From Blastocladiella emersonii ATCC 22665 (taxonomy: Eukaryota > Fungi > Blastocladiomycota), in NCBI GenBank assembly GCA_025594325.1, contig JANHCV010000010.1, positions 372,001 to 436,000 of the forward strand: 64,000 nt of DNA, written 5' to 3'. A program made the position numbers and the translations under genes. The notes beneath the pieces were generated by a model, which did no database searches, was not told the DNA's origin, and saw only the letters and a program-made list of their open reading frames with translations. The stretch's first letter is position 1. Each line of letters opens with the position of its first letter. This document shows, piece after piece, positions 27,173-64,000 of the stretch.

Positions 27173-27838
27173 CTAAACCAGAGCGATCCGCGAACCCGCG
27201 CACGCGCCCAAATGGCGCGTTGCTGTTGCTGGGCCACGGGGAAGGTCATGTCGCACGTGGTCAGGTTGAGAGTCTCGGATACGCTGGCTGGGATGAGCCA
27301 AAGCCGCTGCGAGCGAGGTTGCACCAACCGTGGTCACTCGATTCATCGAGACATCCACAGAAGTGTCTATGCCAGCGGATATGCGGTTGGTCAGGCGAGA
27401 AATCAGCTTGTCGCCTCGGTCCCGCATTGCCAGACTGGCTGACGCAATGAAGCCCCTTCCAGCGCCATGAAAGTGAACCTGCGTCAAAGCGTCCATGAAC
27501 TCGCGACCGCCAACGAGAGCTGAGCGTCGCCACCAGTCGAGAACGTCATAGTGCTTGACGCGGCTGTTTGAAATCGCGTCAAAGTCAAACTCGAGCGGCT
27601 TCCCCGACCGCTGCCACGCCAGCAGCACGTTGACGCAGCCCTTCAGGCTCGCCTCGTTCATTGAAAACGACGTGGCGTGGTCCACGATAGCGCGGCGGAC
27701 CCGCGGCGAGTCCTTGGCGAGTAGCACGCAGACCAGCTGGTGCATCCCGCGAAAGTCGTCGGGGTCGAGCAAGCGCACAGCATGGGCCAGGATCTGATCC
27801 AAGATGTCCGGGACAGATAGTTGCACCAAGTTATTCAT
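27173..27838 (-). pseudogene. LRR family-A copy A1: N-terminal module intact, frameshifted and truncated after the first LRR
   Basis: MNNLVQLSVPDILDQILAHAVRL..KHYDVLDWWRRS aligns with the copies at 32436 and 34009. The frame shifts near 27275 (the other frame gives ETLNLTTCDMTFPV) and homology ends near 27225. Confidence 0.85.
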
Positions 27839-27989
27839 GAGTTTACATTAACGGACATGAGCTGCGGCGGTTGGAAATTCACGCGTGAGCGACGTGGATG
27901 GCACGATATCATGTTCATGGTTGTGAATCTGTGTGGGAGCTACGACGCGAAAATGGCGAGTTTCGCTGAACTAAGCTCGGTCCTCCAAA

Positions 27990-28325
27990 GCTCGAAGGGC
28001 CGAAGTGACGGCGGCAGGTCGCATCGACGCCGAGAACCAATTTCGAGAGATCGAGTGTGTTGAGCGATGACGGTTGGATGCGGAAGATGCGGCCGGGGTC
28101 GACGCACCCGAGCTGCGGGTTTTGAAGGGTCGCCGTGACGTGGGAAGAGCTTGAGCTGGGCTTGACCGTTGATCGGCCTATCCTCTTCAACCCAGTTGAA
28201 GCCGAGCATTGAGAGCGACTTGATTTCGAGGGCTCGCAGCCGGAGAAATTTGATCATGAGAAGCACCAGGTCGCAGACTACAAACTGGACGTTGCTGATC
28301 TGCTGGTTGGAGGTCCGCCAGGGCA
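27990..28325 (-). pseudogene. LRR family-A internal fragment A2
   Basis: VCDL..IKSLSMLGFNWVEEDRPINGQAQLKLFP and, after a frameshift, LQNPQLGCVDPGRIF match the LGMNWIEEGMPIDG..GRVDPGRVF segment of A3 and A4. Confidence 0.8.
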
Positions 28326-28651
28326 CTAACAATCTCGTTCGCGCGCAATTATCATTTTCGGCAATCACCGACACTGGATCAGATTTATTACGCCCGCGCT
28401 CGTCCTATACCAGGACGATGCTCTCCCGCTTGATGAAATCACATGAGTTGAAGGGAGGCAACGTATCTAGTATCATAACCTGCACTGGTCAAACCTTCGT
28501 GGCCAACGACAACGGAACGCGGCCCGTCACGATCGTCGCCGTCCCGCACGGACTGCAACTCTCCACCTGTTGGTTTGCCTTTATATTTGCTTGATCCAAT
28601 GCTGCACAATTCTCGGCGACCCGCTGGCAGCAAGCAACCTTGCTTGTTGAG

Positions 28652-28672
28652 ACGCGTTCCGAAATCATGTGA
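28652..28672 (+). promoter_or_regulatory. Bipartite element ACGCGT-N6-ATCATGTGA upstream of the forkhead gene
   Basis: ACGCGT TCCGAA ATCATGTGA, ending 108 bp before ATG 28780. The same element occurs at 36231, 37846, 58606 and 60762. Confidence 0.7.
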
Positions 28673-28779
28673 GCTGCACGTGGGCTTGAGACGGTCGCAT
28701 TTCCGCCTGCCGCTCAGGGCGCAGTGACCGTTCGGCTCGAGTACTCAATGATCTCAGTGCACGTACACGACGTAAACAA

Positions 28780-30760
28780 ATGGAACTTGATGCATTAGAC
28801 TCGGATCACCTTTCTCTTGCTTATTCCGAGGCCCAGTTAGCGCAGGGAGGTGTTTGTGTTGAAGGTCCTGGTTCGCCGCTCTTGCCGGACTGCAACTCTC
28901 CCCCCGCTGGATTCGCTCGGTCTGAATCTCCGCCGGCCGGCTTTTCGCTGGATCCGACACCGTTGAACCTCTCGCGTGCTCCAACTTCGGATCAGACGGA
29001 CTCGGACCCTCTCCCAAACTTAGGTTGCAAACATGCGCAGACTTTCGAAAACTACGACGCGCGAGCCGCTTGCTATGCTCCAAACCCTGCTCCGCCGCTT
29101 CCGTCGTCTACCACGCGGGGCTTTTCGCCAGCAGTGCCTCCGCCGCACATGCTTACACCGCCGTCATCCGCTCTGCCCTATCACTCTGCTGCTTATTTGC
29201 CGCCTACACTTGCGCCGTACTCGTCGGGCGTTTGGCACGCGCCGATTGACGGGCTCCCCGCGTCGTACTCGACCTATGTGGCATCTCGCCTCTCAAGAGC
29301 GTACGCTGGCGCTTTCGCGCCGTTCACTCACACGCCAGCCTTCAACGGCTTCTCGATGTCGGCTCCAGTCGCACCACCGCAATCGCTGCAGCCGCCCTCG
29401 ACTCGGGCTACACTTTCGGATGTGCCTCCGCCGCAGCCCCAAGCGGCTCCTTAGGAGCCGACATCGCTGCCGTCCCTTGGATCACCAAGCGGAGCTGCGC
29501 AGGCCGGCCCTAAGGTTGTCGAGGCCAAGAAACGGCCCCGCGTGACGAAGAAGAAGCTTGAGTCGCGACAAGTTGTTCAGTCGGCTGTTGATCCCACAAC
29601 TGGGGAAACATACACCCGACCGCTCTTTACTTACAGTCAACTGATCTGCCTTGCAATCCATTCGACGCCCGATCGGAAGATGCTGTTGGCGGATATCTAC
29701 GCGTACATTATGGAACGCTTTCCGTTCTATCGCGTTATTGATCGAGTCCCTTGGCAGGTACGGGCAAGAGTTCCCTCCTTCCTCGCTCGTGGTGATGCCA
29801 GACTAATACCAACCTGTCTCTTTTGTCCATGTAGAATGCTGTCCGACACAATCTTTCAATTGGTTCTGGATTCTCGCGGGTCAAGCGCCCAGTGACCATG
29901 GAAAGGACGGGGAAAGGCGACTACTGGACCGCTTCCGAGGACTTTTCGAAGCGCGTCTTCCGCAATTGTCCCGATTACACTTCGCTCGAGACTTTGACTG
30001 CTTCACTTGCAGAGGCCACTGCGTCACCCACTGCCGCGTCGCCCACCGCCGCGCCGCTCACCGCCAAAGCTGCCATCGCCATGGCTCGGCAGCGTGGGCG
30101 CGCGCCGTACAACACAACCGAGCTCATTTGTGCCGCTCTCGCTTCCACGCCTGACCGCAAAATGACCGCTGCTCAAATTCGAATGTGGGCTCAGCGCGAG
30201 TACGAGTTCTATCGCCGCAAGGACAGCTCACGCTTGCAGGTATGTCCGCCCGCGGATTCTTGGCCGCTGGCGCATGCCTCCATGCTAACCGCGCGGCTCT
30301 TCGTGTGTAGGGTGCCATTAGCAACAAACTCAGCCATCACCATAGCTTCACTTGGGTTCAGCGCGACGCAACTGCCGATCGCGACAACAGGTCGCGCGGC
30401 TACCTCTGGACGGCGAGTGATACCTTTATTCGAGAGACGCTCGCCCGCAGAGTCTGGCAAGGCCCAGCCCCGCTGTCGACTGCGACTTCGAACCTGCCAG
30501 CCGCGACGCATGGCGGCGGCAGCGGCGATTCGAATGGTTCCCCTCCGGCGGACTCGGACACCGAATCCGGCTCCGAATCGGATACACTCGTCAAGCTTGT
30601 TGCACGCAAGCGGCGGCGGGTCGATGGCTTGTATTCCGACCAGTCTGGCGACGAAAGCGCGGGCGTGGAAGATCCTGTGGGCTGGGATGGCCGCGAATCG
30701 GCGGCACCGAGCCCCGCCTTGTCAAACTCGGCGGATTCTCCTGTTTCGTCGGATCGATAG
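28780..30760 (+). pseudogene. Tandem double-forkhead (winged-helix) transcription factor gene with one in-frame TAG (pseudogene, or stop removed by splicing or read-through)
   Basis: FH1: RPLFTYSQLICLAIHSTPDRKMLLADIYAYIMERFPFYR..WQ|intron 29758-29834|NAVRHNLS..GKGDYWT. FH2: RAPYNTTELICAALASTPDRKMTAAQI..LQ|intron 30240-30310|GAISNKLS..RGYLWT. Final stop 30758-30760; internal TAG 29452-29454 is in frame with both flanks. Confidence 0.8.
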
Positions 30761-31154
30761 CTGGTTTGAGCATAAATACGATCCTGTTATTGTTACGTTG
30801 GATGCACAGTGATTGAATTGAGAAGCGAGGCGCCGAGCCAGCGTCAATCGACGCGAAGAGTCCAGTTGGCGAGTAAGCACACGACGGACGCGTCGCGATA
30901 TCCCGTTTATGGCGCTCGCGAGGGCGCGCTCGCGTCGCTCGCTCTCTGTTCACAAGCAACTCTCGCAAATGATGGGTGGAACTAACTTAGCGTGGTGGTC
31001 AAAGCTGGATCCCTGGATGATTTTCGCGGTCGAATAGGGCGTTCGTTACCTTTTCCTTTTGCGCGCACGACTCTTTTGAATGTTGTTAACGTAAGCGTCG
31101 ACGCGTAATAATATAATAGGGGTCATGTCGCGTAGAAAACGCGTAATACTCGTC

Positions 31155-32436
31155 TCACAGCGCCAGGACGGCAGGCGTCGACGGATTCTCCTCGATCAGT
31201 TTGTCGCGATCCGCATGCGGCAGGCCCTCGAGATGAAGCTCGACCAGCGATGACGGGATGCAGCCAAGGACAACTCGAGCACCGATCGCTGTTGCAGCCA
31301 CGCTGGAGATATGTAACCGGACCAGGCGCGTGGATGGGAGGACGTGAGCGAGTTTGGCGAGACCTTCGTCACGGAGCGGATTGCCGCTCACGTGCAAGTG
31401 CTCGAGACGCGGAAGGTGGCGGCAGATTGTCTCCATGTCGGCAGAGCGGGTGAGGCAAGATCTCATGCTCAAGATCTTGAGCAAATGCGGGAGCGCCGGC
31501 GCAAGAATGGAGAGCTGCTCGGAATCAAGGGTGCACGCGTCGAGGCAGAGTGACCGCAGGGTTGTGGGAAAATGGGCAGCCAAGCGGCGAGCGGCGTCGA
31601 CGCTGAAGACCGTGTACGTAAGGCCGATTGATTCCAGTGCAGGCGGAAGAAGAGCGAAAATGCGACCGGGGTCGGCTCGCCCAAAATGAGGGCGTTGCAT
31701 TGTCAGGGTTTCAAGGTTGCGCGGAAACACTTCGAGCTGGTCCAAGCCGTTGATTGGCATATCTTCCTCGACCCAGTTGAGGCCTCGCCAGCGACTTGAT
31801 GGTTCGTGAGTCGTAGAGCTTGAGCAATTGGATTGTCGGGAAGATCAAGTTGCACGCGGTCAGGATGAGAGAGGCAATGCGCTGTCGCGGGTGCACTAGG
31901 GCTACTGCAAGCGCACCCGCACCAGTTGCCGTCACTCGATTCGCGGAGACATCCACAGCACTGATTGTACCGGTGGAGATTAAGTCAGTCAGTCGAAAAA
32001 TCAGCGTGTCGCCTTGGTCCCGCGAAGCCATCTCGGCAGCTGAGACAAAGCCCTGCCCAGCGCCAAGAAAATGAACCCGTGCCATAAGGTCCGTGGGGTC
32101 GCGGTCGGCCAAAAGTCCCGAGCGCCGCCACCAGTCAAAGACGTCGTAGTGCTTGACGCGGCTGTTCGAGATCGCGTCAAAGTCAAAGTCGAGCGGCTTG
32201 CCCGACCGCTGACACATCTGCAGCACATTGATGCGGCCCGTCAGGCTCGCCTCGTTCATTGAAATCGACGTGGTGTGGTCGAAGATAACGCGGCGGACCC
32301 GCGGCGAGTCCTTGGCGAGCATGACGCGCGCGTCGCTGAGCATGCGCTCGATGTCGTCAGGATCTTCAAGCCGCACGTCGTGCGCCAAAATCCGATCGAA
32401 AATGTCTGGGACAGCTAGTTGCGCCAAGTTATTCAT
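31155..32436 (-). pseudogene. LRR family-A copy A3, full length except one 2-nt deletion
   Basis: The ORF from ATG 32436 (MNNLAQLAVPDIFDRIL) shifts frame near 31785 (CTG GCG A GGC CTC AAC TGG, versus CTC ACG CTT GGC ATG AAC TGG in A4) into the 31155-31760 LRR ORF. Confidence 0.88.
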
Positions 32437-32722
32437 GGGTTGCATGAGAAGGGTTCGGTCGGTTCGCAGAGGTAGCGATGAAGGCGAGCGCCACTGGTCA
32501 CGATGAGCGCAAACGCGACCCTGAAACGCGACGCGCGCGCCGCCAGCAAACCGACCGTGTAACTTTCGCAACGCTCGCGAGCGCAGCTCTCGTTAAGCAC
32601 CTTAACGAGTGTGACTGGGCCCAAAGTCTGATGTCATGAGCGACATGGGCCGCGTGGCGCAACGCGTCTTGAGCAGGGTGCATCAATCAGAGTGTATTAC
32701 GGGCAAACCGACTGTTCTTTCA

Positions 32723-34009
32723 TCACAGACTCACTCCAAAGCGGACCACCAGCTTCAGCTGGCTCACCACTGCCCGATCAGCAAGCGGTAAATACTTGAG
32801 CTCGAGCTCGGTGAGCGACGGCGGAGCGCAGTCAAGGACAGCGCGAGCACCGATCTTGCTGGCACCAACGGCAGAAAGATACAAGCGAACCAGGACCGTG
32901 GCCGGGAGATACTCGGTAAGCTTGGCGAGGCCCATGTCGCCAAGCGGATTGCCAGACAGGACAAGGATTTCGAGTCGCGGCGGGAGGTGGCGGCAGAGCG
33001 TGTCCATTTCGCCAAGGCGAAGGTGGCAGGACATCAGATTCATAGTCCTGAGCGTGTGCGGGAGCCGCGGCGCGAGAATATCGAGTTTCCCGGCGCCAAG
33101 GTCAGTTTTAACGAGTTGAAGGGACCAAAGGGACGGCGGCAGGTGCGCCGCCAAGCGGCGAGTTGCAGCAACGCTCAACATTGTGCGCGGAAGCTCGAGC
33201 CAGGTGAGAGTGGGTGGAAGGAGTGCAAACACGCGGCCGGGGTCGACTCGCCCAAATTGCATGCCTTCGAGTGAGAGGCGCTGGAGGTTGTGCGGGAACA
33301 AATCGAGCTGATCCAGGCCATCGATCGGCATACCCTCCTCGATCCAGTTCATGCCAAGCGTGAGCGCTTTGATGGTCGGTGATATGTAGAGCTGAAGGGA
33401 CTGGAGCACCGGAAAGGTCAAGTCGCACGCGGCCAGCTGAAGGTAGGTGACCCGTTGGCCAGGGTGCGATAGGGCAGCTTTAAGCGCGTTTGCACCGATC
33501 GCGGTTACTCGATGCTTCGTGACGTTCACAACGGAGATTTTCCCGGCGCATATGTTATCGACCTGACCTAGAATGAGCGCATCGCCTTGGTCCCGCGACG
33601 CCCGTTCGGCGGCTGAGACAGGCCCTCGTCCAACACCAAGAAAATGGACCCGAATCATGGGCTCGGTAAGGTTACGATCGGCAACAAGTCCTGACCGTCG
33701 CCATCAGTTGACGACGCCGTAGTGCTTGACTGGGCTCGTCGCGATCGCATCCCAGTCAAACTCGAGCGACTTGCCTGACTTCGCCCACATCCGGAGCACA
33801 TGGACGTGACCCGCCAGGCTCGCTTCAGTCGTGGAAATCGACGTGACATGGTCAACGAGTGCGCGGTGGACCCGCGGCGAGTCCTTGGCGAGCCTGACGC
33901 GAGCGTAGCTGAGCATGCCCTCAATGTCGTCGGGATCCTCTAACCACACGGCGTGCGCCAGAATCCGATCGAAAATGTCCGGGAGAGATAGTTGCGCAAA
34001 GTTATTCAT
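32723..34009 (-). pseudogene. LRR family-A copy A4, full length except one nonsense codon
   Basis: ATG 34009 is in frame with the 32723-33658 LRR ORF. A single TGA at 33706-33704 stands where A1 and A3 have Trp (KHYGVVN*WRRSG versus KHYDVFDWWRRSG). Confidence 0.9.
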
Positions 34010-34181
34010 GGGTTGCATGAGCGGGCGGTTCGCTCGCTCGCAGAGGACGAAGATCATGAGGCGACGACGAGTTCAACGCGGGCCACCCCCGACGGAGCGC
34101 CTGACGGAGGCGTGCCGCCAGACTTGGCCCCCTGGCGGCTTCTCACCGCTCTCGCTCGCAATGCAAAGCTGATGCAAAACC

Positions 34182-36037
34182 ATGCTTGACAAACTTTATG
34201 TGCCGGCAATCATCGAGCGGATCTTGGTCCACGCCGTGAAGCTTCACGACAAGGACCGGGCCAAGCGCCACCTCACCCCGAACGAGAACGGCCGCGAGCG
34301 CGTGCGAACGCTCATGCAATACGCCCGCGTGATGCCGCGCGCTCTCATTCCCGGCATCGAGCGGGCGATCCTGCTCCACGCACCCTTGCTTTCGCTGGAC
34401 AGGGCGACCGAGGACGGCAAGGTCGCCGTGCTTGCTCAATGGGCCGCTCACGGCCTTCCCCTCAAGTGCTCTTCCGAAGCGCTCGAATCGGCCATCACGG
34501 GGCGCATGGTGGACGTCGTCGAGTGGTGGCGCAACATGGGCGGAATCGACGACGTGGTTCCGGAGCTCGAGGACTGGCTGCTTGAATCGTTCGGACATAG
34601 CGACTACTTCACCGCTGTTCGTGTCGCACTTGGCCTGGATATCATGTCTACGAGGGCCAGCCTGGAGGTATAGCCGAGTTTGTGGTACGTCGTTTCTGAC
34701 CGACACCCACACGTGTTCCGTATATCAAACTAACCCAAACCGGAACCGGGACGCATAAGGTCGCAAGCCGTGCAACGCTATTGATCACGCCGTTGACGAG
34801 CAATACGACGCCATTGCGAACGGCCTCACCGACAAGATTTCCATGACGCACGAGCCCATCTCGATCCACGGCCTCCAGCGTCTCAACGCCGCCATGGCCA
34901 GCCCGTCGCAGAAACTCAAGGAGCTTCGCCTTTGGGGCTGCACCATCGACATTCCGCGACTCACCACACTCCGCGTCCCCGAGTCGGTGGTCAAGGTGAC
35001 CGTCGGCGGCTTTTGGTTGGGCGGCATCGGCCTATCGTCTCTCAAAAAATGCAGCGGGATTCGTTGGCCCTCGCAACTCAAGTCGCTTTCGCTTGCGGAC
35101 GCGAACCTCAACGGATCCACCGCCACTGACTTGTTTTTTTCACCGACTTCCTCCTTCGCTGCACTCGCTGTCGCTTCACAACTGCGGTCTCAACGGCGTA
35201 ACCTTGATCCAAGTTGTCAAAGTGCTTCCACCGACCCTCGAGGCCTTCGACCTGCGCAAGAACCGAATCAACGCTGCCGCGCTTGCAAACGCTGGCGCTT
35301 TGCTTCCTCCGTCGCTCCAGGTTCTTGATCTGAGCAACAACGCGTATCTCTCGGATGGGCGGTCGAATGTGACTTGGACTTTCCCAGCATCGCTCGAGGA
35401 GCTCAACCTGCTTGGCACCAAGCTCGGCACCCTTGGTACGCAAGCCATCGCGACAGCCCTTCCTCGGTCGCTCAAAAAGCTCTTGATGTCGGAAAGCGAC
35501 CTCGACCCAGAGGAGGCCGCAACTATCTTCGCCTCTCTCCCGCCCTCGCTCACCAAGCTCTACATCACCAACTGCCCGATTTACGACAAGGCCGCCGCCG
35601 CGCTGGCCCGCGCGCTCCCCCAAAAGCTCGAGGAGTTTGTCTTCTACTGGTCCAAGCTCACGGCTCTGCAGACGGCTGGGTTTCTGCGCCGCTTGCCGCC
35701 CACGCTGCACACGCTCGACCTTGGCGGGGCCGTGCTTGGTACTTCGGGCACTCGCCTTCTCATTAAGAATATGCCGAAGCGCCTTCAGGTCCTGAAGCTG
35801 CGCTCCGCGGAATTCGACGACGCGTGCGCCGGTTTCCTTGCCCGCAGCCTCCCGCGCACGCTGACGTGGCTCGACCTCCCAATGAACAAGATCACGTCGG
35901 TCGGTGCCCTCTTGATCACGTCCAAGGCGCCGCTGAAGCTGACTCGGCTCTCGTTCTGCGAGAACGGGATCCCGCCGAGTGCTCAGCCAGCGATTCGTGC
36001 CGCCACCCCAGCTACCCTCACCGACCATACTTTCTGA
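34182..36037 (+). pseudogene. LRR family-B copy B1, one intron and a +1 frameshift in a T7 run
   Basis: Exon 34182-34667 (YVPAIIERILVHAV..VVEWWR), probable intron 34668-34767 (weak GTATAG donor, CTAAC branch, AAG acceptor), then LRRs. T7 at 35134-35140 breaks DLFF|HRLPPSL; T6 would give an intact gene. Confidence 0.8.
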
Positions 36038-36230
36038 TCGTTGTTTTGTATTTCATTTTTCCCTGGCTCCAATGGCTCGGAGTTCTTGTTGTTCCAATAT
36101 ATTATGATGATTCGCTTCCACCTAATCATGAATGAGTAATCCCTTACTGGTGCGAGGTCTCGTACAAAGTAGCCAGTGAAAGAGCAAGGTTCTGCATGGG
36201 CATCAGCCAAAACTACATGGAGGCAATTTT

Positions 36231-36251
36231 ACGCGTCGCGTTATCATGTGA
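36231..36251 (+). promoter_or_regulatory. Bipartite element upstream of LRR gene B2
   Basis: ACGCGT CGCGTT ATCATGTGA, ending 132 bp before ATG 36383. Confidence 0.75.
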
Positions 36252-36382
36252 CAGCCACATGATGCCGGGCCTGCTCCCTGCCGCGCGCCCGCGCCGCGAG
36301 CAGCAACTGCGGTGCAGGCTACGTCCTCTTGCTCCCGCTCAGGCACCATCGACGTAAACCTATGAAAAGCTGATGCAACGTC

Positions 36383-37594
36383 ATGTTCGGTCCAATCCAC
36401 GTACCCGAGGTGCTTGAGCGAATCCTCGTCGATGCCATTGCACTCTGCGACCCAGACGACGCGTCGGCTCTCGTCCAAATTGCGCGCGTGGTGCCGCGGT
36501 CGCTCGCTCCGCACGTCGAGCGCGCCCTCCTGCAGCATGCGTCGCATCTCTCGCTTGAAGCAGCCACTGCGCGTGGTAGAGTGGATATACTTGATCGCTG
36601 GGCTGCGCATGGCCTTCCGCTTCAGTGGTCCGTCGAGGCCTTGCAAGCGGCAGTCGACTCGCGACACCTCGCCTGTTTGGAATGGTGGCGCGACTCAAAT
36701 ACGCTTGACGAAGCGGATCCGGAGCTTGTGGACTGGCTGGAGGAGCACCCGTCAAACGACGAGGACGATTTTGACCCCGTTCGTGTAATTCTTGGTCTCG
36801 GTATTTAAGCTTACGAGCCTGAAGATGAAAATGGCACTGCTCCGCCTGCTCCGGTACGTGCGATCCGTTGGTAGTGTCGAATGAAGCATTTCTGACAAAC
36901 ACAAAACCATGGCTCGCCGGGACGTGATGCATGAAACGCACTCAAAGCAATCGCAGCAGGTCGCCTCTCCCACCTTCGATACCATGGAATGAACATTTCG
37001 CTCGCCAGTATTCGCTTGCTCAACGGAGCAATGGTGAGCCCAATGCAGGCGCTCCGCACCGTGGACCTGTATGGGTCGACAATCGATTTGGTTCGCCTGC
37101 GCGCAGTTCGGTTTCCAGACACGGTGACAACTATTTCGCTTGGGCAACTATGCCTTGGGGTCGCGGCCGAGGGTCACGCATTGGAACCTGTCAACTGGCC
37201 TGCTTCGCTCTCGACGCTGGCCATCATTCACGCCGAGCTCCCGGTGCGTACCGCAACTTGTCTCCTTGCTGAGCTTCCCGAGGGCTTGACTTCCTTGAAT
37301 CTGTCCTCGTGCGGAATCTCCGACAACAATGTGGTGCAGATCGCGTCGTGCTTCCCGCGCGGACTCAAGCGACTTGTCCTTCGGGACAATTTCCTGACTG
37401 GGCGCGGAATCAGCGAGCTAGACCTGACCACGAACGAGATCACCGATTCTGTCGCCCAGACTTTGGCTAAGAACCTCCCGCTAAAATTGACGCATCTAGA
37501 CTTGCTCGAGAATCGAGTGAACAAGGCGGGATACACGAAGATTCGCATTGCGGCGTTGCAGCGGCGCCAAATGCTCACAATTGATGAAGTGTAA
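36383..37594 (+). pseudogene. LRR family-B copy B2 with multiple lesions
   Basis: HVPEVLERILVDAI..LEWWR module; TAA at 36806-36808; GTACGT donor at 36854 with no obvious acceptor; TGA at 36932-36934; short LRR part with an apparent internal deletion near 37410. Confidence 0.82.
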
Positions 37595-37845
37595 GCCGAG
37601 TTTGTATTCTAATGAACGCTCCCGGGAACTCGTTTTGCTGTGATAAATTTCTCGCTGTCTTTTCTCCAGTATTTTGTCTCAGGAAGCGGGCACTGGCTCG
37701 AGTTTGGGCCGTGCACGCGGAAGGCACAAGCGCAACGCGCAGCAGAGCGTGAGCCTTTGAGGATTTGAAGAACATGGTCCATGAGGTGCGTGTCAATCGA
37801 GGTGCACTAAACTAAACGCTTACCGAAACGCGCGTAAAGTGGCTC

Positions 37846-37866
37846 ACGCGTCGCGATATCATGTGA
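37846..37866 (+). promoter_or_regulatory. Bipartite element upstream of LRR gene B3
   Basis: ACGCGT CGCGAT ATCATGTGA, ending 109 bp before ATG 37975. Confidence 0.75.
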
Positions 37867-37974
37867 ATTTCACGTGAGGATCAGCCCTGTCGGCCTGCGA
37901 GACGGCCGCGTGGCGCGGCGAGTTTGAGTTTGCTCCCTCGCTCTTTGTACCTCACCTCGCAGAACAAATTACTC

Positions 37975-39737
37975 ATGGAAACTACATGCAATGGTCTCGG
38001 ACACCGCTTTGTCCCCGCCATCTTCGAGCGGATTCTTGTTTATGCTGTCGAGCTGAGCGACCAGGCTGACGTCGCGGCGCTGATGCAGTACTCGCGCGTC
38101 ATTCAACACAATCTCGTTCCCGGAGTTCAGCGCGTCATTCTTAAACATGCACCGAGTCTTTCCCTCTTCTCGGCAACCTGCGAGGGCCGAGTCGCTGTGC
38201 TTGAGCGGTGGGCTGCGCTTGGGTTGCCCCTCCAGCTCACCGACGCAATGACTGCGCTGCAAAAGGCGGCGGAAATCCGTTCCCTTTCCACTTTCGAGTT
38301 TTGGCGGGATACGGGCGCCCTGGCATCCGAGCTGCGCGACTTTTTCGAATGCCCAGAAACTCTCGTTATAATCAAGGTAACCGGTATCATGATGGGCTCT
38401 AGCGAAGTACGTGGCTTTGTTCATTCATTCGAGGACAGAGGACTAACGCAGGCAGCAAACGCACTTGATTCAAGGCCTCGGGCTTGGACGTTGAAGGTGC
38501 CCGCTTCCAAACCTTGCTTAACGACGTGTCGGAGGGAAAGCTCTCCGATTTGATTTTGCGCAAGCAGCGGCTGCGTCTAAATAGCATTCGTCGCCTTGGC
38601 GAAGCAATGGCAAGCCCGAACCAAGCCCTCCGTACCGTCGACTTGGACGGGACCACCCTCGACGTTCGGCGCCTCCAAGCGCTTCACTTCCCCGATACGT
38701 TGACAAGTGTCACGCTCGGCGAGCTCTGGCTCGATACTCGATCCTTTGACGCGTCCCCTGGTCCTATTTCTTGGCCGTCGTCCCTCGAATCGCTTTCAAT
38801 CTCCCGTACCGCTATCCCTACCTCACGCGAAGCGAACTTTCTTTTCAGCCGGCTCCCCGATGGCCTCAAATCGCTCAAAGTCTCCTCCTGCAGCTTGGAA
38901 AGCGAGGCAGCGAAGGATATAGCGTTTCTGCTTCCCCAGCGGCTGGAGCAGCTCAACCTTCAAGGAAGCCGCGTTAGCGAACTTGACGTCTATATCATCC
39001 TGGATCAACTCCCGTCTTCGCTGCGCATACTCGATCTCCGTAGCGCTCCAAACGGCAACGATTATTCATCCTTGGTGTCGTTTTGGCCTTTCCCACCGTC
39101 CCTGACGGAGCTCCGACTCTCTCACCTCAACACCCGTGTCAGCGACCTCACATCGTCGCTTCCGCCGACTCTTCGCGTCCTCGAAGTGTCAAATTCGGAA
39201 CTATCCGCGCCCGACTTGTCCGAGGTCTTCCAATCACTTCCACCAACCTTGCGCGTGCTCGATGTGACGGGTACGGACTTTAACCTGGTCCGCCCACGCG
39301 TGGAGTGGCAGCCATTCACCTTTTCCGCCGACTTGGAACGGCTCACCATGTCCGGTTGCCGCCTTCTCCCGTATTCCTTGACGCACTTTATCCCATGTCT
39401 TCCGACCTCGCTCCGCTTGCTTGACTTGAGCGATTGCCAAGTGACCACGACCGGCGCAAAAGTGCTCGCCCAGCATATGCCGCCGAACCTGGAAATCCTT
39501 GTGCTCGGACGCGCTGAGCTAAGTGACGGCGACGTTGCCCTCCTCGCACCGTGCCTCCCAAATACTCTTATAGCCCTCGACTTGGGCGAAAACGCCATCA
39601 CAGATGACTGCGCGGGCATCCTGGCCTCGCACTTGCCACCCGCGTCGTTGCCCTACCTTGACCTGACCGATACTCATGTGTCCGACCTGGGTCTCGACCA
39701 AATTTTTGGAGCTCTTCAGATTGCGGACACCTCGTGA
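37975..39737 (+). CDS. F-box-like/ankyrin-like/RNI-type LRR protein B3, apparently intact, 2 exons, ~564 aa
   Basis: Exons 37975-38406 and 38475-39737 (GTACGT donor, GACTAAC branch, AAG acceptor, phase 0). FVPAIFERILVYAV..FEFWR, then about 12 LPxxLxxLxL repeats. The start codon is uncertain. Confidence 0.82.
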
Positions 39738-54405: not shown

Positions 54406-55003
54406 CGAGGCCAGGGTCGAGTTCGTTGCAAGCACTCCCTGGACGATTCTGGTGCAAGAACCCAGGGAGTAGAACGCCTGCGCGCTGCCCAAGGTGCGCG
54501 CCCACGCTGACACTCCTGATCTCGTTGAGTTCTACAGACGACGACTGCAACAGGGTAGCTGTAGCTCGTCGGCCGCGAGTGCTCGCCTGTGAGGACCAAG
54601 TGCGACAGAACGCGCTCCAAGGTCGACGGCCGTGACCGAGCTCGTTGCACGAACTGGTCAACCGGCTGGGCTGGCGCTCGCCATGCTGCTTTCGACCATG
54701 ATCGGTATCCGATGAGCAGCGCGGCGCGCTCGGATCAGATCCGCGTTGCTCGCGTAAGCGGAGAGAAGCCACGCGTGAGACGGAGCGCGAGACGCGTCGC
54801 GATATCGCGTGGATTGGGGAGCCGCAGACACGTGCGTCACAGGAAGCGGCCGGAACAAAACGGCGCCGATCGATTCGCTCGTTCGCCGCGCGCCGTGTGT
54901 TTCACGCGTCTGCCCGCTGCCCGGCGCGCGTATAAAACCTGCCCGCGCCCCCGACGCCCGGTCCCCGCTCCCGCCGTGAGTCTGTATCTCGTCGATCAAC
55001 ACC

Positions 55004-56839: not shown

Positions 56840-58477
56840 TTACTCGGGCGCTGACAAAGGCGCCATGATATGGCTGATTTGCTCTGGAGTCTTCCCAACC
56901 CATGTTCTGTTGCCTCGCGACATGGTGATAGACGTGAGGCCCTGCGGCAAGTGGCCGGCCAGGATGCGCGCTCCAACGCTTGTGAACTCATTCGTGGAAG
57001 CGTCCAATCGAATCAAAGATGTTGGAAGCGCTGGCGCGAGGACGACAATCGCTGCATCGTTGAGGTTCGTGGAACCAACCCGCAAGCATTCAAGTCGCGG
57101 GGGCATGTTTTGCGCCAGTAGCTTAGCACCCTCCGATCCCAGGTCGCACCAGGTGAGGTCGAGATGTGTAAGAGTCCGAGGAAGTCGCGGAACCAACTCC
57201 AAGGCGCCCAGACGCGGGATCTTGCTCACGCCGAAGCTCAACAGAGTGAGGTGTTGGGGGAGCTCGCAGGCAAGCTCGCTAGCGGCTTCGTCCGTAACCA
57301 CGCTAAATTGGAGCGTGAGATTGCGTAGTGAAAAGGGCGCATTGCTGAGCGCATTCAAAATTTGAGGAGTCAGCTCGCTTGCTGTAACGTCCAGCGAAAC
57401 AAGGGAGCGCGGAAGCTCAACAAATGGCTCGCGAGCAGAACTGGTGGTAGTGGTTGAGATCTGTTCGGCTCCGGTCCTCGCGCAAGCAGTGATATGGCCA
57501 ATCGATAAGTGTTCGAGCGAGCTCGGAAGTCGCGCGACAGTAGAAGCGAAGCCTTCACTCGTCAAATCGCTGCCCTCTATGTCCAACCGCTGCAGCTGCG
57601 AAGGTAGAAATCGGACAAGCGAACAAAAGTCTCGATCGCTGAGCGAGCAATTCCACAGGGTCAGCGTCCGAAGCGTGTCGGGAAGTTCCCCGAGGAGAAG
57701 ATCAAGTGCACTCGTCAGGTTTCCCGAGGAGAAAGCGAGCGATTCCAGACCAGACGGCCACTGCATGATGGTGAGTGGGACAGACATGAGCACTGGAGAG
57801 AGAGTAAACCAGTGCGCATCGATCTCAGCTTCGCGCAATGACCCTGGAAACCGCATAGCGAGAAATCGAGGAAGATCGATCGTGCAGTATCCGACGGTAA
57901 CCGACCGAAGTGACTGGAAGGGGTGAGCCATGGCAGCGTTGAGCGCATCGACCCCGGCCATCGAAATAGGTTGCTCATCAAGATTGAGTTCAACGAGGGT
58001 ACCGGCAGCAATGTCGGTGCATAGCTCGTTGACGCCCTCGTCCACGGCGAGCAATGGACTTTCGTCGTCATTGTAGGGGTGTACTCCAAGTGCGATGTAG
58101 ACATGTGATGTGACCTCGCGCGCATCCAACCACGGCTTGATTTCGTTGGCATTGAGCGAGCCCGTTGTGCGCCACCATTCGAGGGCCTCGAGACGGCGGG
58201 AAGCGATAGCGAACTCCAAGGAGTCCAGCGAGCAGGTGAGCGGAACACCAAGCGACAACCACTTGTTCAAGATGAACACGTCGCCACGTTCCGTCGCCGC
58301 ATCGAGAGAGAGGTGGTAAGCGTGCATCAAGAGTGCACGCTCGACGCGCGGGGCTAGAGATCGCGGCAGCACCCGCGCACAGTGGAGAAAGCTGGCAGCA
58401 TCCGTGGACTTGATTCGCTCAATCGCATAAACAAGAATCCGCTCGATCACCTCGGGAACATGCATAGCCTGGAACAT
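56840..58477 (-). CDS. F-box-like/ankyrin-like/RNI-type LRR protein B4, intact, intronless, 545 aa
   Basis: HVPEVIERILVYAI..LSLDAATERGDVFILNKW..LEALEWWR, followed by LPxxLxxLxL repeats. Confidence 0.88.
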   Translation of the reverse strand: MFQAMHVPEVIERILVYAIERIKSTDAASFLHCARVLPRSLAPRVERALLMHAYHLSLDAATERGDVFILNKWLSLGVPLTCSLDSLEFAIASRRLEALEWWRTTGSLNANEIKPWLDAREVTSHVYIALGVHPYNDDESPLLAVDEGVNELCTDIAAGTLVELNLDEQPISMAGVDALNAAMAHPFQSLRSVTVGYCTIDLPRFLAMRFPGSLREAEIDAHWFTLSPVLMSVPLTIMQWPSGLESLAFSSGNLTSALDLLLGELPDTLRTLTLWNCSLSDRDFCSLVRFLPSQLQRLDIEGSDLTSEGFASTVARLPSSLEHLSIGHITACARTGAEQISTTTTSSAREPFVELPRSLVSLDVTASELTPQILNALSNAPFSLRNLTLQFSVVTDEAASELACELPQHLTLLSFGVSKIPRLGALELVPRLPRTLTHLDLTWCDLGSEGAKLLAQNMPPRLECLRVGSTNLNDAAIVVLAPALPTSLIRLDASTNEFTSVGARILAGHLPQGLTSITMSRGNRTWVGKTPEQISHIMAPLSAPE

Positions 58478-58605
58478 TTTGCATGGAGTTTACGTTGTGT
58501 TGGCGAACAGGTTTGATTGCTGCTGCGGAGAGGTGAGCAGCGGATGGCGAAGGCGAGCATCGGCAGGCAGCGTGGCGTTCGCGAGGCCCCCGCGTGGCCG
58601 CCGCA

Positions 58606-58626
58606 TCACATGATTGATCGACGCGT
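58606..58626 (-). promoter_or_regulatory. Bipartite element upstream of LRR gene B4
   Basis: Minus strand ACGCGT CGATCA ATCATGTGA, ending 129 bp before ATG 58477. Confidence 0.75.
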
Positions 58627-58971
58627 CTCCGATGCTCACCTTCGCGCGATATGCGGGTGCGCTGCGGATGACACCCTGCCGACGCATTGCGCGTTCAGAT
58701 TTTACAATAGGAAGCGCGGTCCTGCACTGTTGCGGGAAGACATCTTGCGCGTCGTTCACACAAGCGACGTGACGGTTCAATACGAATGTTCACCGCTTCT
58801 CACAGCGATCCGAGTGAGTTCCACCCTTAAGGCAGGATCTCTGAATGTAGGTTAGTGGAGGTTTGCGACGACGAAATTGTATTATGGACGCAGATAGGGA
58901 TATCCGCTTGATAGCGGCGATCGGGCAACGAGTTTGACAGGTTGGACATCAACGAGAACTGAGGCTCGTAA

Positions 58972-60633
58972 TTATTGCACTTGACGCAAGCGCGCAGCCG
59001 CCACTTCAAGCGCGGTTATGCCAACACGCGTTATTTCGTTGCGCTCAACAACAAGGCTCGTGAGAGATCTGGGAAGATGCTTGGCGAGGAAAAAAGCGCC
59101 AGCGTCCGTGATCTTGTTCTTGCACAAGTCTAGGCTGATGAGCGTGCCAGGAAGCGCTGGCGCGAGGGCAATCATGGCCGCGTCGTCGAGATTTGTGACG
59201 TAGAGATACAATTCCTGAAGCCGATGGGGCATGTACAGGGCGAGCATCTTGGCACCCTCGAAGCCAAGATTCGTGGAGGAGAGATCAAGGTAGGAAAGCG
59301 AAGGAGGAAGCCGTGGGATGAGGACCATAGTGCTCGAACGTGTAAGCTTACAGCCGCGGACGTCAAAGCGGGCGAGTTCGCGGGGAAGCACACTGGCAAG
59401 TTCGGCTATCGCGTCATATGGCGCATTCTTGGCCGGATTGCCCCAGATGGTAACGTCCTTGAGTGAAGGTCGAGGGAAGTTGCCAAGAGTGCAAAACAGT
59501 TGGCGTGTCAGCTCGACCCTTGAGACTGAGAGTGAATTGAGATTCATCGGAAGCGGACCCGATCCTTGGGCTTGCACAGGGTGGACCGGACTAGCTAAGG
59601 CAGCTGTCGGCGTGATTTCTGCCCCAGCGCGTAAGCCGCGTCGGTTTGCCACGCGACTAAACGAGATCCTTTTGAGCGAGGCTGGGAGAAGTGGTACAAT
59701 TGCAACAAAGCCAGCGCTGGTCACATCATTTTCGTCGAGTTCGAGCTCCAGAAGACACGTGGGCAGGGCTCGCACAAGTTTGTAAACGTCATGGTCGGTA
59801 AGGGCGCAGTTATTGACAGTGAGTGACTCGAGCATCGTGGGAAAGCCTTGTAAGAGGTATGTGACAGCAGCTGGTAACACAGCGGAGGTAAGCATGAGCG
59901 ATTTGAGGCCCGGTGGCCAGGCCATGGGCATTAGATGGGACTGTTGCGCCGGGAGGCTACCCAGCCAGTACGTCTCGAAGGTTGCGGAGTGCAGGGACGG
60001 TGGAAGCCGAGGGGCAAGCAAACGAGCAAGGTCAATCGTGGAGGCGTCGAACCGAATTGAGCGCAAAGCCTGTGCAGGGCTTGCCATGGCAGCGTTGAGC
60101 GCTTCGATTCCAGCCATCGAGACACGCATGCCCATCATTTCGACCTCCACGGTGCTACCATCGGCAATTTTAGCGCATAACTCGGCAATCCCCACGTCGA
60201 CAGCGAGACCGTCGGAAGCTAAACCTGAAGGCACGCCGAGGGTGACATAGGCATCGGTATGGTCCTCGTCGCGGCCCTCTAGCCACAGCTTGAGCTCGTC
60301 GACGTCAAGTGAGCCCGTCGCGCGCCACCACTCGAGAGTTTCGAGATGTCGCTCATCGACTGCAGCTGCTAGGGCTTCAAAGGAGCATTTGAGCGGGACT
60401 CCTAGTGCTGCCCATTTGTTGAGCACGACCAGGTCGCCACGCGCGGTCGCTGCGTCAAGAGAGAGATGTGCGGCGTGCTGTAGAAGTGCTCCCTCGACTC
60501 GCCGGGAAGCAGCCCGCAGCATCACTCGCGCATACTGCAAGAGCCCGGCAGCGTCGGCCGGGTCGCCGTGTTGACGGATGGCATAAACAAGAACTCGCTC
60601 ACACAAGTGAGGTAGATGCATGGCATGGATCAT
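58972..60633 (-). CDS. F-box-like/ankyrin-like/RNI-type LRR protein B5, intact, intronless, 553 aa
   Basis: HLPHLCERVLVYAI..LSLDAATARGDLVVLNKW..LETLEWWR plus LRRs; collinear with B4. Confidence 0.88.
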   Translation of the reverse strand: MIHAMHLPHLCERVLVYAIRQHGDPADAAGLLQYARVMLRAASRRVEGALLQHAAHLSLDAATARGDLVVLNKWAALGVPLKCSFEALAAAVDERHLETLEWWRATGSLDVDELKLWLEGRDEDHTDAYVTLGVPSGLASDGLAVDVGIAELCAKIADGSTVEVEMMGMRVSMAGIEALNAAMASPAQALRSIRFDASTIDLARLLAPRLPPSLHSATFETYWLGSLPAQQSHLMPMAWPPGLKSLMLTSAVLPAAVTYLLQGFPTMLESLTVNNCALTDHDVYKLVRALPTCLLELELDENDVTSAGFVAIVPLLPASLKRISFSRVANRRGLRAGAEITPTAALASPVHPVQAQGSGPLPMNLNSLSVSRVELTRQLFCTLGNFPRPSLKDVTIWGNPAKNAPYDAIAELASVLPRELARFDVRGCKLTRSSTMVLIPRLPPSLSYLDLSSTNLGFEGAKMLALYMPHRLQELYLYVTNLDDAAMIALAPALPGTLISLDLCKNKITDAGAFFLAKHLPRSLTSLVVERNEITRVGITALEVAAARLRQVQ

Positions 60634-63096: not shown

Positions 63097-64000
63097 TTAC
63101 GGATGGGGCGGCGCAAGCTGGAGGCCTCCGGGCGGATCGCCTTTCCATCCTGTGCAGCGACTCCTTGTGCAGCGAACTGCGCTCACGCGCGCACAAACGC
63201 GGCCAGCCACGATTTGGTGATGGTCCTCTTGATGGAGCCCTGGCGCGCCTTGGTTGTGCGCGCCGAGTACCTTGTAAAGCGCCTCACTGCAGCATACGCG
63301 CACGTAGCGAGTAGCTCTAGCGCGCTCAAGGCAACTGAGATCTAGCGCGCTCAAGGCAACTGAAATCAGATTTGCGACGGACGCGTCAAGGTGAGCCGCT
63401 CGCTCACAACAGCATGCTGGTATTCTCGGCAAGCCGATATGGAAGTAGTTGGCAATCTTGAACGAAGGGCATGAACAAACTAAGCACAACGAATGCGCCC
63501 GGCGACTCGATATCGACCAACGCGTTGGTTTTCCGCCAAGAAAGCACCTAAGGACGATGGAGTTCGCGTCGCACGCTATGATCCAGATTGAGGCCTTGAG
63601 CGAGCTCGATTTCTTGGGCACGGAACAAGAGAGCTCGGATGAAGCGGACCTACGGTGGAAGGATCGCGAAGGATTGACGTCCGTTACGCTGCCAGGAAGG
63701 TATGTGACTAGTGCGAGCAAGTTGGCGCCCGAGAGTGCACAGCAGCTGACATTGAGGTATTGGAGGGTCGCGGAAAGATATTTGGCCATCGTTATCGCCG
63801 CTTCAGGATGAAACTGGTTCGAGGAAATGTCCAGGCTCTGGAGCGCCGGCGGAAAGAAAACTGCTGCTTTGACAAGCTCACAAGCAGGTGAGCGGAAAGT
63901 TAGGCTGCGCTGCTGTGCGCCTCTCGCGGCGGAAAGCGGCGGGCGAGGCATCATCAACTTGTCAAGGTTCGTGATGCGATCGCCGCTAAAATCGAGCTTT
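63097..64000 (-). pseudogene. LRR gene 3' portion B7 (decayed; continues beyond the window)
   Basis: FPPALQSLDISSNQF..YLSATLQYLNVSCCAL..YLPGSVTDVN are LRR units; the distal part is degenerate and paralogous to B6. Confidence 0.65.

What the first reader, a model, noticed from the sequence alone, without database searches (positions are those of the whole stretch)
27173..39737. Accessory island of F-box-like/ankyrin-like/LRR genes in birth-and-death turnover
Seen: seven copies of two subfamilies (A1-A4 minus, B1-B3 plus) in 12.6 kb of lower-GC DNA between core genes; only B3 looks intact. All share an N-terminal (V/L)PxIxERIL helix, an SLxxAxxxGxVxVLxxW..LEWWR segment and RNI-like LPxxLxxLxL repeats. 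Known: Dikarya NLRs generally lack LRRs, and clustered, fast-turnover LRR arrays are typical of immune receptors and effectors. Inference: a lineage-specific surveillance or SCF-adaptor family; I know no described function for this architecture.
Basis: partly seen in the sequence, partly recalled or inferred. Interest (0 to 1): 0.75.

Follow-up and report, generated by a model that had tools for sequence, protein, structure and literature searches.

The report
Decaying ankyrin-LRR adaptor gene cluster
This stretch of the water fungus Blastocladiella emersonii holds seven mostly broken tandem copies of a very large, undescribed gene family whose proteins join a conserved helical/ankyrin head to a variable leucine-rich-repeat tail; they look like protein-binding adaptors, but neither a true F-box nor an immune role could be shown.

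Summary
Window 27.2-39.7 kb is a lower-GC island (55-61% against 65-75%) between separase and a coiled-coil gene. It carries four A-type copies on the minus strand and three B-type copies on the plus strand of one paralog family, plus an unrelated double-forkhead gene. Only B3 is full-length, if a 68-nt intron is spliced out. B2 is open but short, B1 is frameshifted, A3 has one in-frame stop, A2 is frameshifted, and A1 and A4 are remnants.

The genome is B. emersonii ATCC 22665, a blastoclad, not Dikarya. It holds at least 150 copies of the N-terminal module. Two intact intronless members lie at 56.8-60.6 kb of the window.

The protein has three parts:
- a three-helix head carrying an LPxEIxxRIL motif;
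- two to three divergent ankyrin repeats, homologous to chytrid and giant-virus ankyrin arrays;
- about 14 ribonuclease-inhibitor-type LRRs.

The head is the most conserved part, and the concave LRR face is the most variable (omega 0.4-0.9 against 0.2-0.3 elsewhere). F-box identity failed both Pfam models, and the profile-profile and fold tests gave no significant match; only weak leads remain. There is no NOD or signalling domain.

The scan has reported this family before on other DNA of the same genome. The most likely reading is a set of modular binding adaptors evolving by birth and death.

The parts
27173..27843 (-). A1: truncated copy with the N-terminal module and the first LRRs only. 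It ends against the 3' side of the separase gene.
   Evidence: ORF of 221 aa; blastn 69% to A3 over 27229-27843; tblastn to B5 residues 7-204
27899..28374 (-). A4: LRR-only remnant of a further A copy. It is frameshifted and has no N-module.
   Evidence: repeat D5 28139-28203; blastn 71% to A3 33024-33144; overlapping ORFs in two frames
28780..30812 (+). Embedded unrelated gene with two partial forkhead domains. It is not a family member and is absent from the sister array.
   Evidence: Pfam Forkhead E 1.8e-11 and 3.5e-6; no match in C2:576-592 kb
31155..32436 (-). A2: complete-length A copy broken by one frameshift near 31785-31795, with a short LRR tail.
   Evidence: tblastn frames -2 then -3; junction read in three frames against A3; weak LRR_6
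32723..34009 (-). A3: A copy in one frame with a single in-frame TGA at 33704-33706, at the first W of the conserved WWR motif.
   Evidence: tblastn in a single frame, 34000-32795; stop context; one search reports 1 TGA
34182..36037 (+). B1: annotated as H9P43_007606 (412 aa). It has an intron at the module/LRR junction (34621-34759 in the public model) and a frameshift at the T7 run 35134-35140.
   Evidence: P0019 is 100% identical over 34182-34622; frames 1 then 2 overlap at 35117-35148; LRR_6 48 bits
36383..37594 (+). B2: open if an intron of about 165 nt (36783 to 36947-36959) is removed. It is short, lacking about 100 residues of the LRR region.
   Evidence: tblastn B5 1-309, then 417-552; intron enumeration
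37975..39737 (+). B3: the only full-length open copy of the island, about 565 aa if the intron 38407-38474 (GTACGT...CTAAC...AG) is removed.
   Evidence: LRR_6 53 bits on the 417-aa LRR exon
56840..58477 (-). B4: intact intronless member, 545 aa, in the second low-GC island.
   Evidence: single ORF; 45% identical to B5
58972..60633 (-). B5: intact intronless member, 553 aa, used as the reference for structure and searches.
   Evidence: single ORF; AlphaFold2 pLDDT 85.8, pTM 0.82
63097..63957 (-). A further LRR-bearing ORF of the second island; the array continues beyond the window end.
   Evidence: weak LRR_6; N-module match at C2:436039-436608 just outside the window

Best explanation
The island is a worn tandem array of a Blastocladiella-specific branch of a larger blastoclad family. 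Each gene encodes a soluble protein with no signal peptide or membrane segment, built from three parts. Residues about 5-55 form a three-helix head, the most conserved part. Residues about 56-135 form two to three divergent ankyrin repeats. The rest is a horseshoe of about 14 ribonuclease-inhibitor-type LRRs whose concave beta-strand 'x' positions are the most variable sites.

The most likely mode of action (inferred) is a modular adaptor. The invariant head/ankyrin module would dock every paralog onto one common cellular partner. The diversified LRR face would bind a different protein target in each paralog. The common partner is unknown; Skp1 or an SCF-type ligase is the leading candidate but is unproven.

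The family grows by tandem and segmental duplication and decays by frameshifts, stops and truncation. In this island only one to two of the seven copies can still encode a protein.
For: Family size and identity:
- At least 150 N-module matches (550 candidates) and at least 100 LRR matches in the 32.65-Mb genome.

Architecture:
- The AlphaFold2 model of B5 has pLDDT 85.8, with helices 7-20, 28-36 and 40-53, ankyrin-like helix pairs over 59-132, and 14 strands over 163-528.
- The LRR part matches ribonuclease inhibitor at Z 26.4 with 382 residues aligned. Pfam LRR_6 scores 48-53 bits against a cut-off of 23.4.
- The N-domain matches ankyrin domains at Z 5.2-6.5 over residues 54-140.
- Profile positions 55-110 match multi-repeat Ank_4 proteins of chytrids and a giant-virus MAG at E down to 4.6e-62.

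Conservation pattern:
- Column entropy is 1.27 for the head, 1.33 for the LRR scaffold, 1.76 for other LRR positions and 2.72 for the concave x positions.
- Omega is 0.38-0.87 at concave positions against 0.17-0.31 elsewhere.
- Overall omega of 0.2-0.35 shows that the intact members are constrained genes.

Modularity:
- The same head precedes pure ankyrin arrays in B. emersonii, B. britannica and Allomyces javanicus.

Birth and death:
- B1, B2, B3 and the A type each pair with a positional counterpart in a sister array at C2:576-590 kb, with support 98/91, 85/81, 100/99 and 100/99.
- The lesions of each copy are listed under parts.
Against:
- Omega never exceeds 1, so the variable face could reflect relaxed constraint rather than diversification.
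- GC3 of 0.60-0.69 against 0.83-0.87 in core genes suggests low expression.
- Nine of ten intact ORFs are absent, as such, from the public protein set, so their status as expressed genes is unverified.
- The head may be only an N-terminal cap of the ankyrin stack: several ankyrin domains superpose on residues 4-140 as a whole, at rmsd 5-6.7 A.
Confidence: 0.55

Rival explanations
1. The head is a true, highly divergent F-box. The family would then be a set of more than 150 SCF substrate receptors (F-box-ANK-LRR) that hand targets bound by the LRR to Skp1-Cul1 for ubiquitination.
For: - The LPxEIxxRIL helix followed by D..L...V..R is in the register of the F-box consensus. hhalign finds that register, with P 0.054 over 39 columns and P 0.0034 over the 12-column first helix using a more diverse head alignment.
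- The ESM Atlas nearest named clusters for residues 1-57 are all F-box clusters, with scores 0.76-0.84.
- Three helices are predicted at the N-terminus.
- The genome has three Skp1-like loci.
- The pattern of a conserved head and a variable binding tail matches the expanded F-box families of nematodes and plants (own knowledge).
Against: - Pfam F-box-like and F-box find 38 and 27 canonical F-boxes in this genome, but none at any family head (head positions).
- No F-box hit at E up to 10 in 25 heads.
- The hhalign probabilities are 1% and 9%.
- No F-box protein appears among the Foldseek or VIA matches of the N-domain, and the FBXL17 alignment covers the LRR only.
- The head-alignment profile (A5, which also carried columns from three full-length sequences) hits no solved F-box protein at E up to 10.
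- Atlas scores under 0.9 are stated to be leads only.
Confidence: 0.3
2. The family is a NOD-less innate-immunity or non-self surveillance repertoire. Each LRR would recognise a pathogen or viral protein, for example from the giant viruses of zoosporic fungi, with the head signalling or sequestering.
For: - Large tandem arrays with many pseudogenes.
- Variation concentrated on the concave LRR face.
- Placement in accessory-like low-GC islands.
- The ankyrin unit is shared with a giant-virus metagenome protein.
Against: - No signalling, death or nucleotide-binding domain: head, ankyrin repeats and LRR account for the whole protein.
- Omega stays below 1.
- The paralogs are old (dS 0.3 to above 1).
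- There are no expression or infection data.
- The island holds no viral or transposon hallmark genes.
Confidence: 0.2
3. The array is largely non-functional repeat DNA: a selfishly amplified or virus-derived gene family that is mostly dead, with the open copies surviving by chance.
For: - Five of the seven island copies are broken.
- GC3 is low.
- Most intact ORFs are not in the public annotation as such.
- The Pfam FNIP repeat model, whose repeats are common in Dictyostelium and giant viruses (own knowledge), gives above-cut-off to borderline hits.
Against: - Intact members spread over many contigs show omega 0.2-0.35 in both domains. Many single ORFs of 540-650 aa persist despite dS above 1, which is not expected without selection.
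- No transposon or viral genes lie in the island.
- The head is shared with Allomyces, so the family is old in the host lineage.
Confidence: 0.1

Closest known systems
Expanded F-box substrate-receptor families (FBXL proteins; the nematode FBXA and plant F-box-LRR expansions)
   Same: A short conserved N-terminal helical module is followed by a variable protein-binding repeat domain. Hundreds of tandemly arrayed paralogs include many pseudogenes, and variation is concentrated in the binding domain. The head shares the LPxE(I/L)xxxIL motif.
   Different: The head fails both Pfam F-box models and the profile-profile test. It is about 7 residues longer between helix 1 and helix 2 and lacks the conserved Trp. 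An ankyrin segment sits between head and LRR. Skp1 binding is untested.
Ribonuclease inhibitor / NLR-type (RNI-like, LRR_6) LRR domains
   Same: The fold is the same 28-29-residue alpha/beta LRR horseshoe (Z 26.4 to 2bex_B; NLRP and NOD2 LRRs are also among the top matches), with variable residues on the concave sheet.
   Different: There is no NACHT/NB-ARC or effector domain, and sequence identity is only 15-23%. A disordered insert (residues 330-357 in B5) interrupts the horseshoe.
Chytrid / blastoclad / giant-virus 'WW' ankyrin arrays (Pfam Ank_4)
   Same: The A..G..hL..W / L..LEWWR two-repeat unit of the N-module is homologous (profile E down to 4.6e-62). In Blastocladiella and Allomyces the same three-helix head precedes such arrays.
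   Different: Here only one unit (two to three repeats) is kept, and the rest of the array is replaced by LRRs. The units themselves fall below Pfam's Ank_4 cut-off.
Legionella AnkB (F-box + ankyrin) and ASB proteins (ankyrin + SOCS box)
   Same: A small E3-docking box is joined to ankyrin repeats. The AnkB ankyrin domain superposes on residues 57-136 (Z 5.6).
   Different: The AnkB F-box was not co-aligned with the head. The ASB box is C-terminal. Neither protein carries LRRs.

Membership tests
F-box (PF00646 / PF12937) | Match to the family profile above the curated cut-off | tested here: not met
   No F-box hit at E up to 1-10 in 10 + 25 family sequences. Whole-genome scans find 38 (PF12937) and 27 (PF00646) canonical F-boxes, none at a family head.
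F-box (PF00646 / PF12937) | Profile-profile homology to bona fide F-boxes | tested here: inconclusive
   hhalign of the head alignment against 20 F-boxes from this genome: probability 1%, P 0.054 over 39 columns in the expected register. With a more diverse head alignment: probability 9%, P 0.0034, but only the 12-column LPxEIxxRIL helix aligns.
F-box (PF00646 / PF12937) | Three-helix F-box fold | tested here: inconclusive
   Three helices are predicted (7-20, 28-36, 40-53). No F-box protein appears among the Foldseek or VIA matches, which are filled by ankyrin domains.
F-box (PF00646 / PF12937) | Binding to Skp1 | not testable with these tools
   No complex prediction is available. Three Skp1-like loci exist in the genome.
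Ankyrin repeat (Ank_4, PF13637) | Match to the family profile above the curated cut-off | tested here: not met
   Best E 0.15-0.17, in 2 of 25 members.
Ankyrin repeat (Ank_4, PF13637) | Homology to proteins that do pass the Ank_4 cut-off | tested here: met
   N-domain profile positions 55-110 match 5-10 tandem units in proteins with Ank_4 at 62-92 bits (cut-off 22.7), with E 4.6e-62 to 1e-27.
Ankyrin repeat (Ank_4, PF13637) | Ankyrin helix-loop-helix stack | tested here: met
   VIA: 40 or more of the top 50 rows are ankyrin domains, Z 5.2-6.5, rmsd 3-4 A over about 80 residues (54-140). The Z values are modest for helical repeats.
RNI-like LRR (LRR_6, PF13516) | Profile match above cut-off and alpha/beta horseshoe fold | tested here: met
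   LRR_6 scores 48.4 and 53.2 bits against 23.4 for B1 and B3. Ribonuclease inhibitor matches at Z 26.4, 382 aligned, with Foldseek E 1e-12.
NLR / STAND immune receptors | Central NACHT or NB-ARC nucleotide-binding domain | tested here: not met
   No such Pfam hit. The 553-aa model is fully accounted for by the head, the ankyrin repeats and the LRR.
FNIP repeat (PF05725) | Profile match above cut-off, distinct from generic LRR | tested here: inconclusive
   31.8 bits (B1) and 21.0 bits (B3) against a cut-off of 21, overlapping stronger LRR_6 matches.

The most novel reading that the evidence does not exclude
The three-helix head is a previously unrecognised, F-box-derived Skp1-docking module. 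If so, B. emersonii carries a cryptic repertoire of 150-500 SCF substrate receptors, mostly missing from its annotation. Their LRR faces would diversify to tag foreign or selfish proteins (giant-virus or parasite factors) for degradation. That would be a ubiquitin-based surveillance system in an early-diverging fungus, parallel to the nematode and plant F-box expansions.
Probability: 0.25. Interest if true: 0.7.

Novelty: new variant of a known kind. Interest (0 to 1): 0.45.

Why it matters
Zoosporic fungi are poorly annotated. Here a family of at least 150 genes, possibly several per cent of the gene count, is almost invisible in the public protein set: 9 of 10 intact ORFs tested are not present as such. 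The family joins a conserved docking head to a diversifying LRR face. If the head docks to an E3 ligase or another common effector, this would be the largest adaptor repertoire known in fungi and a candidate for LRR-based recognition outside the NLR framework. Even if not, it shows how much lineage-specific repeat-protein biology is hidden in blastoclads, and it flags the low-GC3 islands as accessory compartments of this genome. This particular island adds little function of its own, because most of its copies are dead.

Tried and rejected
- **Word-based protein searches.** Searches with B5, whole and restricted to residues 1-140, found only three and one B. emersonii proteins. They are too insensitive to define the taxonomic range.
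- **Promoter element.** ACGCGTCGCG(A/T)TATC lies upstream of B2 and B3. It has 110 copies in the genome against 0 for the control, but none in 20 other family loci with their upstream DNA. It was therefore rejected as a family-wide promoter element.
- **Mobile-element or viral cargo.** The island has no transposon or viral hallmark genes, so this was rejected.
- **Simple segmental duplicate of the sister array.** The gene order B1-B2-B3 is shared, but the A copies and the forkhead gene differ.
- **Head profile against PDB sequences.** No F-box was found. Alignment A5 carried extra columns from three full-length sequences, and its only hit was an LRR.
- **Spliced models.** The joined B1-B3 models were examined only as junction peptides in a script. 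The joined proteins were not sent to any search; the exons were searched apart by reference.


Full report
**What is there**

Window 27.2-39.7 kb is a lower-GC island, 0.55-0.62 against 0.65-0.75 in the flanks. It lies between the 3' end of a separase gene (Peptidase_C50) and a coiled-coil gene.

DNA repeat families link three minus-strand copies at 63-83% identity and three plus-strand copies at lower identity. tblastn with an intact paralog hits every copy at E 1e-15 to 1e-51. The C-terminal ORFs carry RNI-type LRRs: LRR_6 scores 48-53 bits for B1 and B3 and is weaker for the A copies. The N-terminal ORFs have no Pfam hit.

**State of each copy**

| Copy | Coordinates | State |
|---|---|---|
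| A1 | 27173-27843, minus | N-module and the first LRRs, then cut off |
| A4 | 27899-28374, minus | Frameshifted LRR remnant of another copy |
| A2 | 31155-32436, minus | One frameshift near 31.79 kb |
| A3 | 32723-34009, minus | One frame, with a single TGA at 33704-33706, at the first W of the conserved WWR motif |
| B1 | 34182-36037, plus | Junction intron plus a frameshift at the T7 run 35134-35140 |
| B2 | 36383-37594, plus | Open if spliced, but lacks about 100 LRR residues |
| B3 | 37975-39737, plus | Full-length (about 565 aa) if the 68-nt GTACGT...CTAAC...AG intron 38407-38474 is removed |

- The public annotation (H9P43_007606, P0019) bridges the B1 frameshift with extra introns.
- The introns are inferred from sequence only. 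The joined models were not sent to any search; the exons were searched apart.
- A gene with two partial forkhead domains (28780-30812) sits inside the island and is unrelated to the family.
- Outside the given coordinates, a second low-GC island holds two intact intronless members: B4 at 56840-58477 and B5 at 58972-60633, both on the minus strand. It also holds a further LRR ORF at 63097-63957.

**Organism and family size**

- Contig C2 is 1,735,363 bases long, exactly the contig length of the NCBI proteins of Blastocladiella emersonii ATCC 22665. One of those proteins is 100% identical to B1 exon 1.
- The genome paper (PMC9730499) describes 21 HiFi contigs and does not mention ankyrin, leucine-rich or F-box proteins.
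- The genome holds at least 150 N-module matches, all at E below 1e-9, from 550 candidates. It holds at least 100 LRR matches, and many single ORFs of 540-650 aa.
- Of ten intact ORFs tested, only one is present as such in the 15-billion-protein collection. The family is therefore largely missing from, or mis-modelled in, the annotation.

**Architecture**

An AlphaFold2 model of B5, built with 19 paralogs, has pLDDT 85.8 and pTM 0.82. It shows:
- three helices at 7-20, 28-36 and 40-53;
- ankyrin-like helix pairs over 59-132;
- 14 LRR strands over 163-528;
- a disordered insert at 330-357.

The LRR part superposes on ribonuclease inhibitor at Z 26.4 with 382 residues aligned (Foldseek E 1e-12).

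The N-domain folded alone (pLDDT 86.4) has no significant Foldseek match. In the VIA search it matches ankyrin domains over residues 54-140, at Z 5.2-6.5.

A profile of the N-domain was searched against 1.84 billion representatives and found 2360 proteins. Most match positions 55-110 five to ten times. These are Ank_4 proteins of chytrids (Zopfochytrium, Cladochytrium), of metagenomes and of a giant-virus MAG. That segment is therefore a genuine, divergent two-repeat ankyrin unit.

The head (positions 1-55) was found only in B. emersonii, B. britannica, Allomyces javanicus and one metagenome protein. Outside B. emersonii it precedes ankyrin arrays, not LRRs. Among the 150 listed hits, head plus LRR was seen only in B. 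emersonii; deeper hits could not be inspected.

**Is the head an F-box?**

Evidence against:
- Pfam finds no F-box in 35 family sequences.
- The same Pfam models find 38 and 27 canonical F-boxes in this genome, none at a family head.
- No F-box protein appears in any fold list, and FBXL17 aligns through its LRR only.
- The head-alignment profile (A5, which also carried columns from three full-length sequences) hits no solved F-box protein.

Weak evidence for:
- hhalign of the head against 20 F-boxes from this genome gives P 0.054 in the expected register. With a more diverse head alignment it gives P 0.0034, but only for the 12-column LPxEIxxRIL helix.
- The ESM Atlas places residues 1-57 nearest to F-box clusters, at 0.76-0.84. 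The tool rates such scores as leads only.
- Three Skp1-like loci exist in the genome.

Verdict: there is an F-box-like motif, but membership is not shown. I put about 0.3 on a true divergent F-box.

**Selection and history**

- Pairwise Nei-Gojobori omega is 0.2-0.35 in both domains for intact members, so these are constrained genes.
- Using the modelled strands, the concave LxxLxLxx 'x' positions have a column entropy of 2.72 bits. This compares with 1.33 for the LRR scaffold, 1.76 for other LRR positions and 1.27 for the head.
- Omega at the concave positions is 0.38-0.87, against 0.17-0.31 elsewhere. It is elevated but never above 1.
- Family GC3 is 0.60-0.69 (mean 0.66) against 0.83-0.87 in the flanking core genes.
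- A sister array at C2:576-590 kb (GC 0.575) carries counterparts in the same order. In a tree of the N-modules, B1, B2, B3 and the A copies each pair with a sister-array gene, with support 98/91, 85/81, 100/99 and 100/99.
- An array that already contained the four types was therefore duplicated as a block. Afterwards it gained copies (the A copies here, B3 there) and lost others. This is birth-and-death evolution, but on an old time scale (dS 0.3 to above 1).

**Interpretation**

The best-supported reading is a family of soluble modular adaptors. A conserved head/ankyrin module would dock to a common partner, and a diversified LRR face would bind different targets. The architecture, the conservation pattern and the evolutionary dynamics are shown. 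The adaptor function and the partner are inferred.

An SCF-receptor role and an immune-surveillance role remain possible and are not mutually exclusive. A purely junk or viral origin is unlikely, given the purifying selection, the presence of the head in Allomyces and the absence of mobile-element genes in the island.

**Relation to earlier work of this scan**

Follow-ups on other windows of the same genome reached the same description and also left the F-box and immunity questions open (s1-076345, s1-076332, s1-269499, s1-292515). This window adds:
- the sister-array synteny;
- the site-class omega values;
- the GC3 contrast;
- the taxonomic split between head-plus-ankyrin-array proteins (Blastocladiella, Allomyces) and head-plus-LRR proteins (B. 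emersonii only, so far);
- the annotation gap.

**Limits**

- No complex prediction was available.
- The head was not folded alone.
- Copy counts are lower bounds.

Noticed in passing
window 30888-30902, 36231-36245, 37846-37860, 54792-54806 (variant at 28652-28683): The 15-mer ACGCGTCGCG(A/T)TATC occurs 4 times in the window, all on the plus strand. The exact ...GATATC form occurs 110 times in the genome, against 0 for the reversed control. Its flanks are not conserved, so it is a discrete element and not part of a longer repeat. It lies 130-150 nt upstream of B2 and B3 but is absent from 20 other family loci.
   Followed up: partly
window 28780-30812 (+): A gene with two partial forkhead domains (each matching only the first half of the Pfam model) is embedded in the LRR island. 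Its GC3 is low (0.52-0.64), and it has no counterpart in the sister array.
   Followed up: partly
G000 C2:576000-590100 (L046, L047): A sister array 175 kb downstream carries B1-, B2-, A- and two B3-type copies in the same order as the window's island. It also has low GC (0.575), and several copies contain stops.
   Followed up: partly
L009 and L011 (G000 C15:2554000-2561000): Two neighbouring paralogs share a nearly identical head (N-domain dS 0.16) but are highly diverged in the LRR (dS 1.8). This suggests gene conversion or recombination confined to the head module.
   Followed up: no
G000 C15:2012492-2012704, C1:792512-792658, C1:3199651-3199794: Three Skp1-like loci are present in the genome, two of them in unusually long ORFs (227-237 aa).
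   Followed up: no
window 56840-60633 and nine other loci (L001-L018): Nine of ten intact 545-603-aa family ORFs are not present as such in the public protein collection. One (L004) appears to be annotated as a 313-aa model (P0001). The family is under-annotated.
   Followed up: partly
P0068, P0072 (B. emersonii proteins H9P43_000246, H9P43_004864): The same head+ankyrin module is annotated in front of a SART-1 domain and of a TEX47 domain. These may be real fusions or merged gene models.
   Followed up: no
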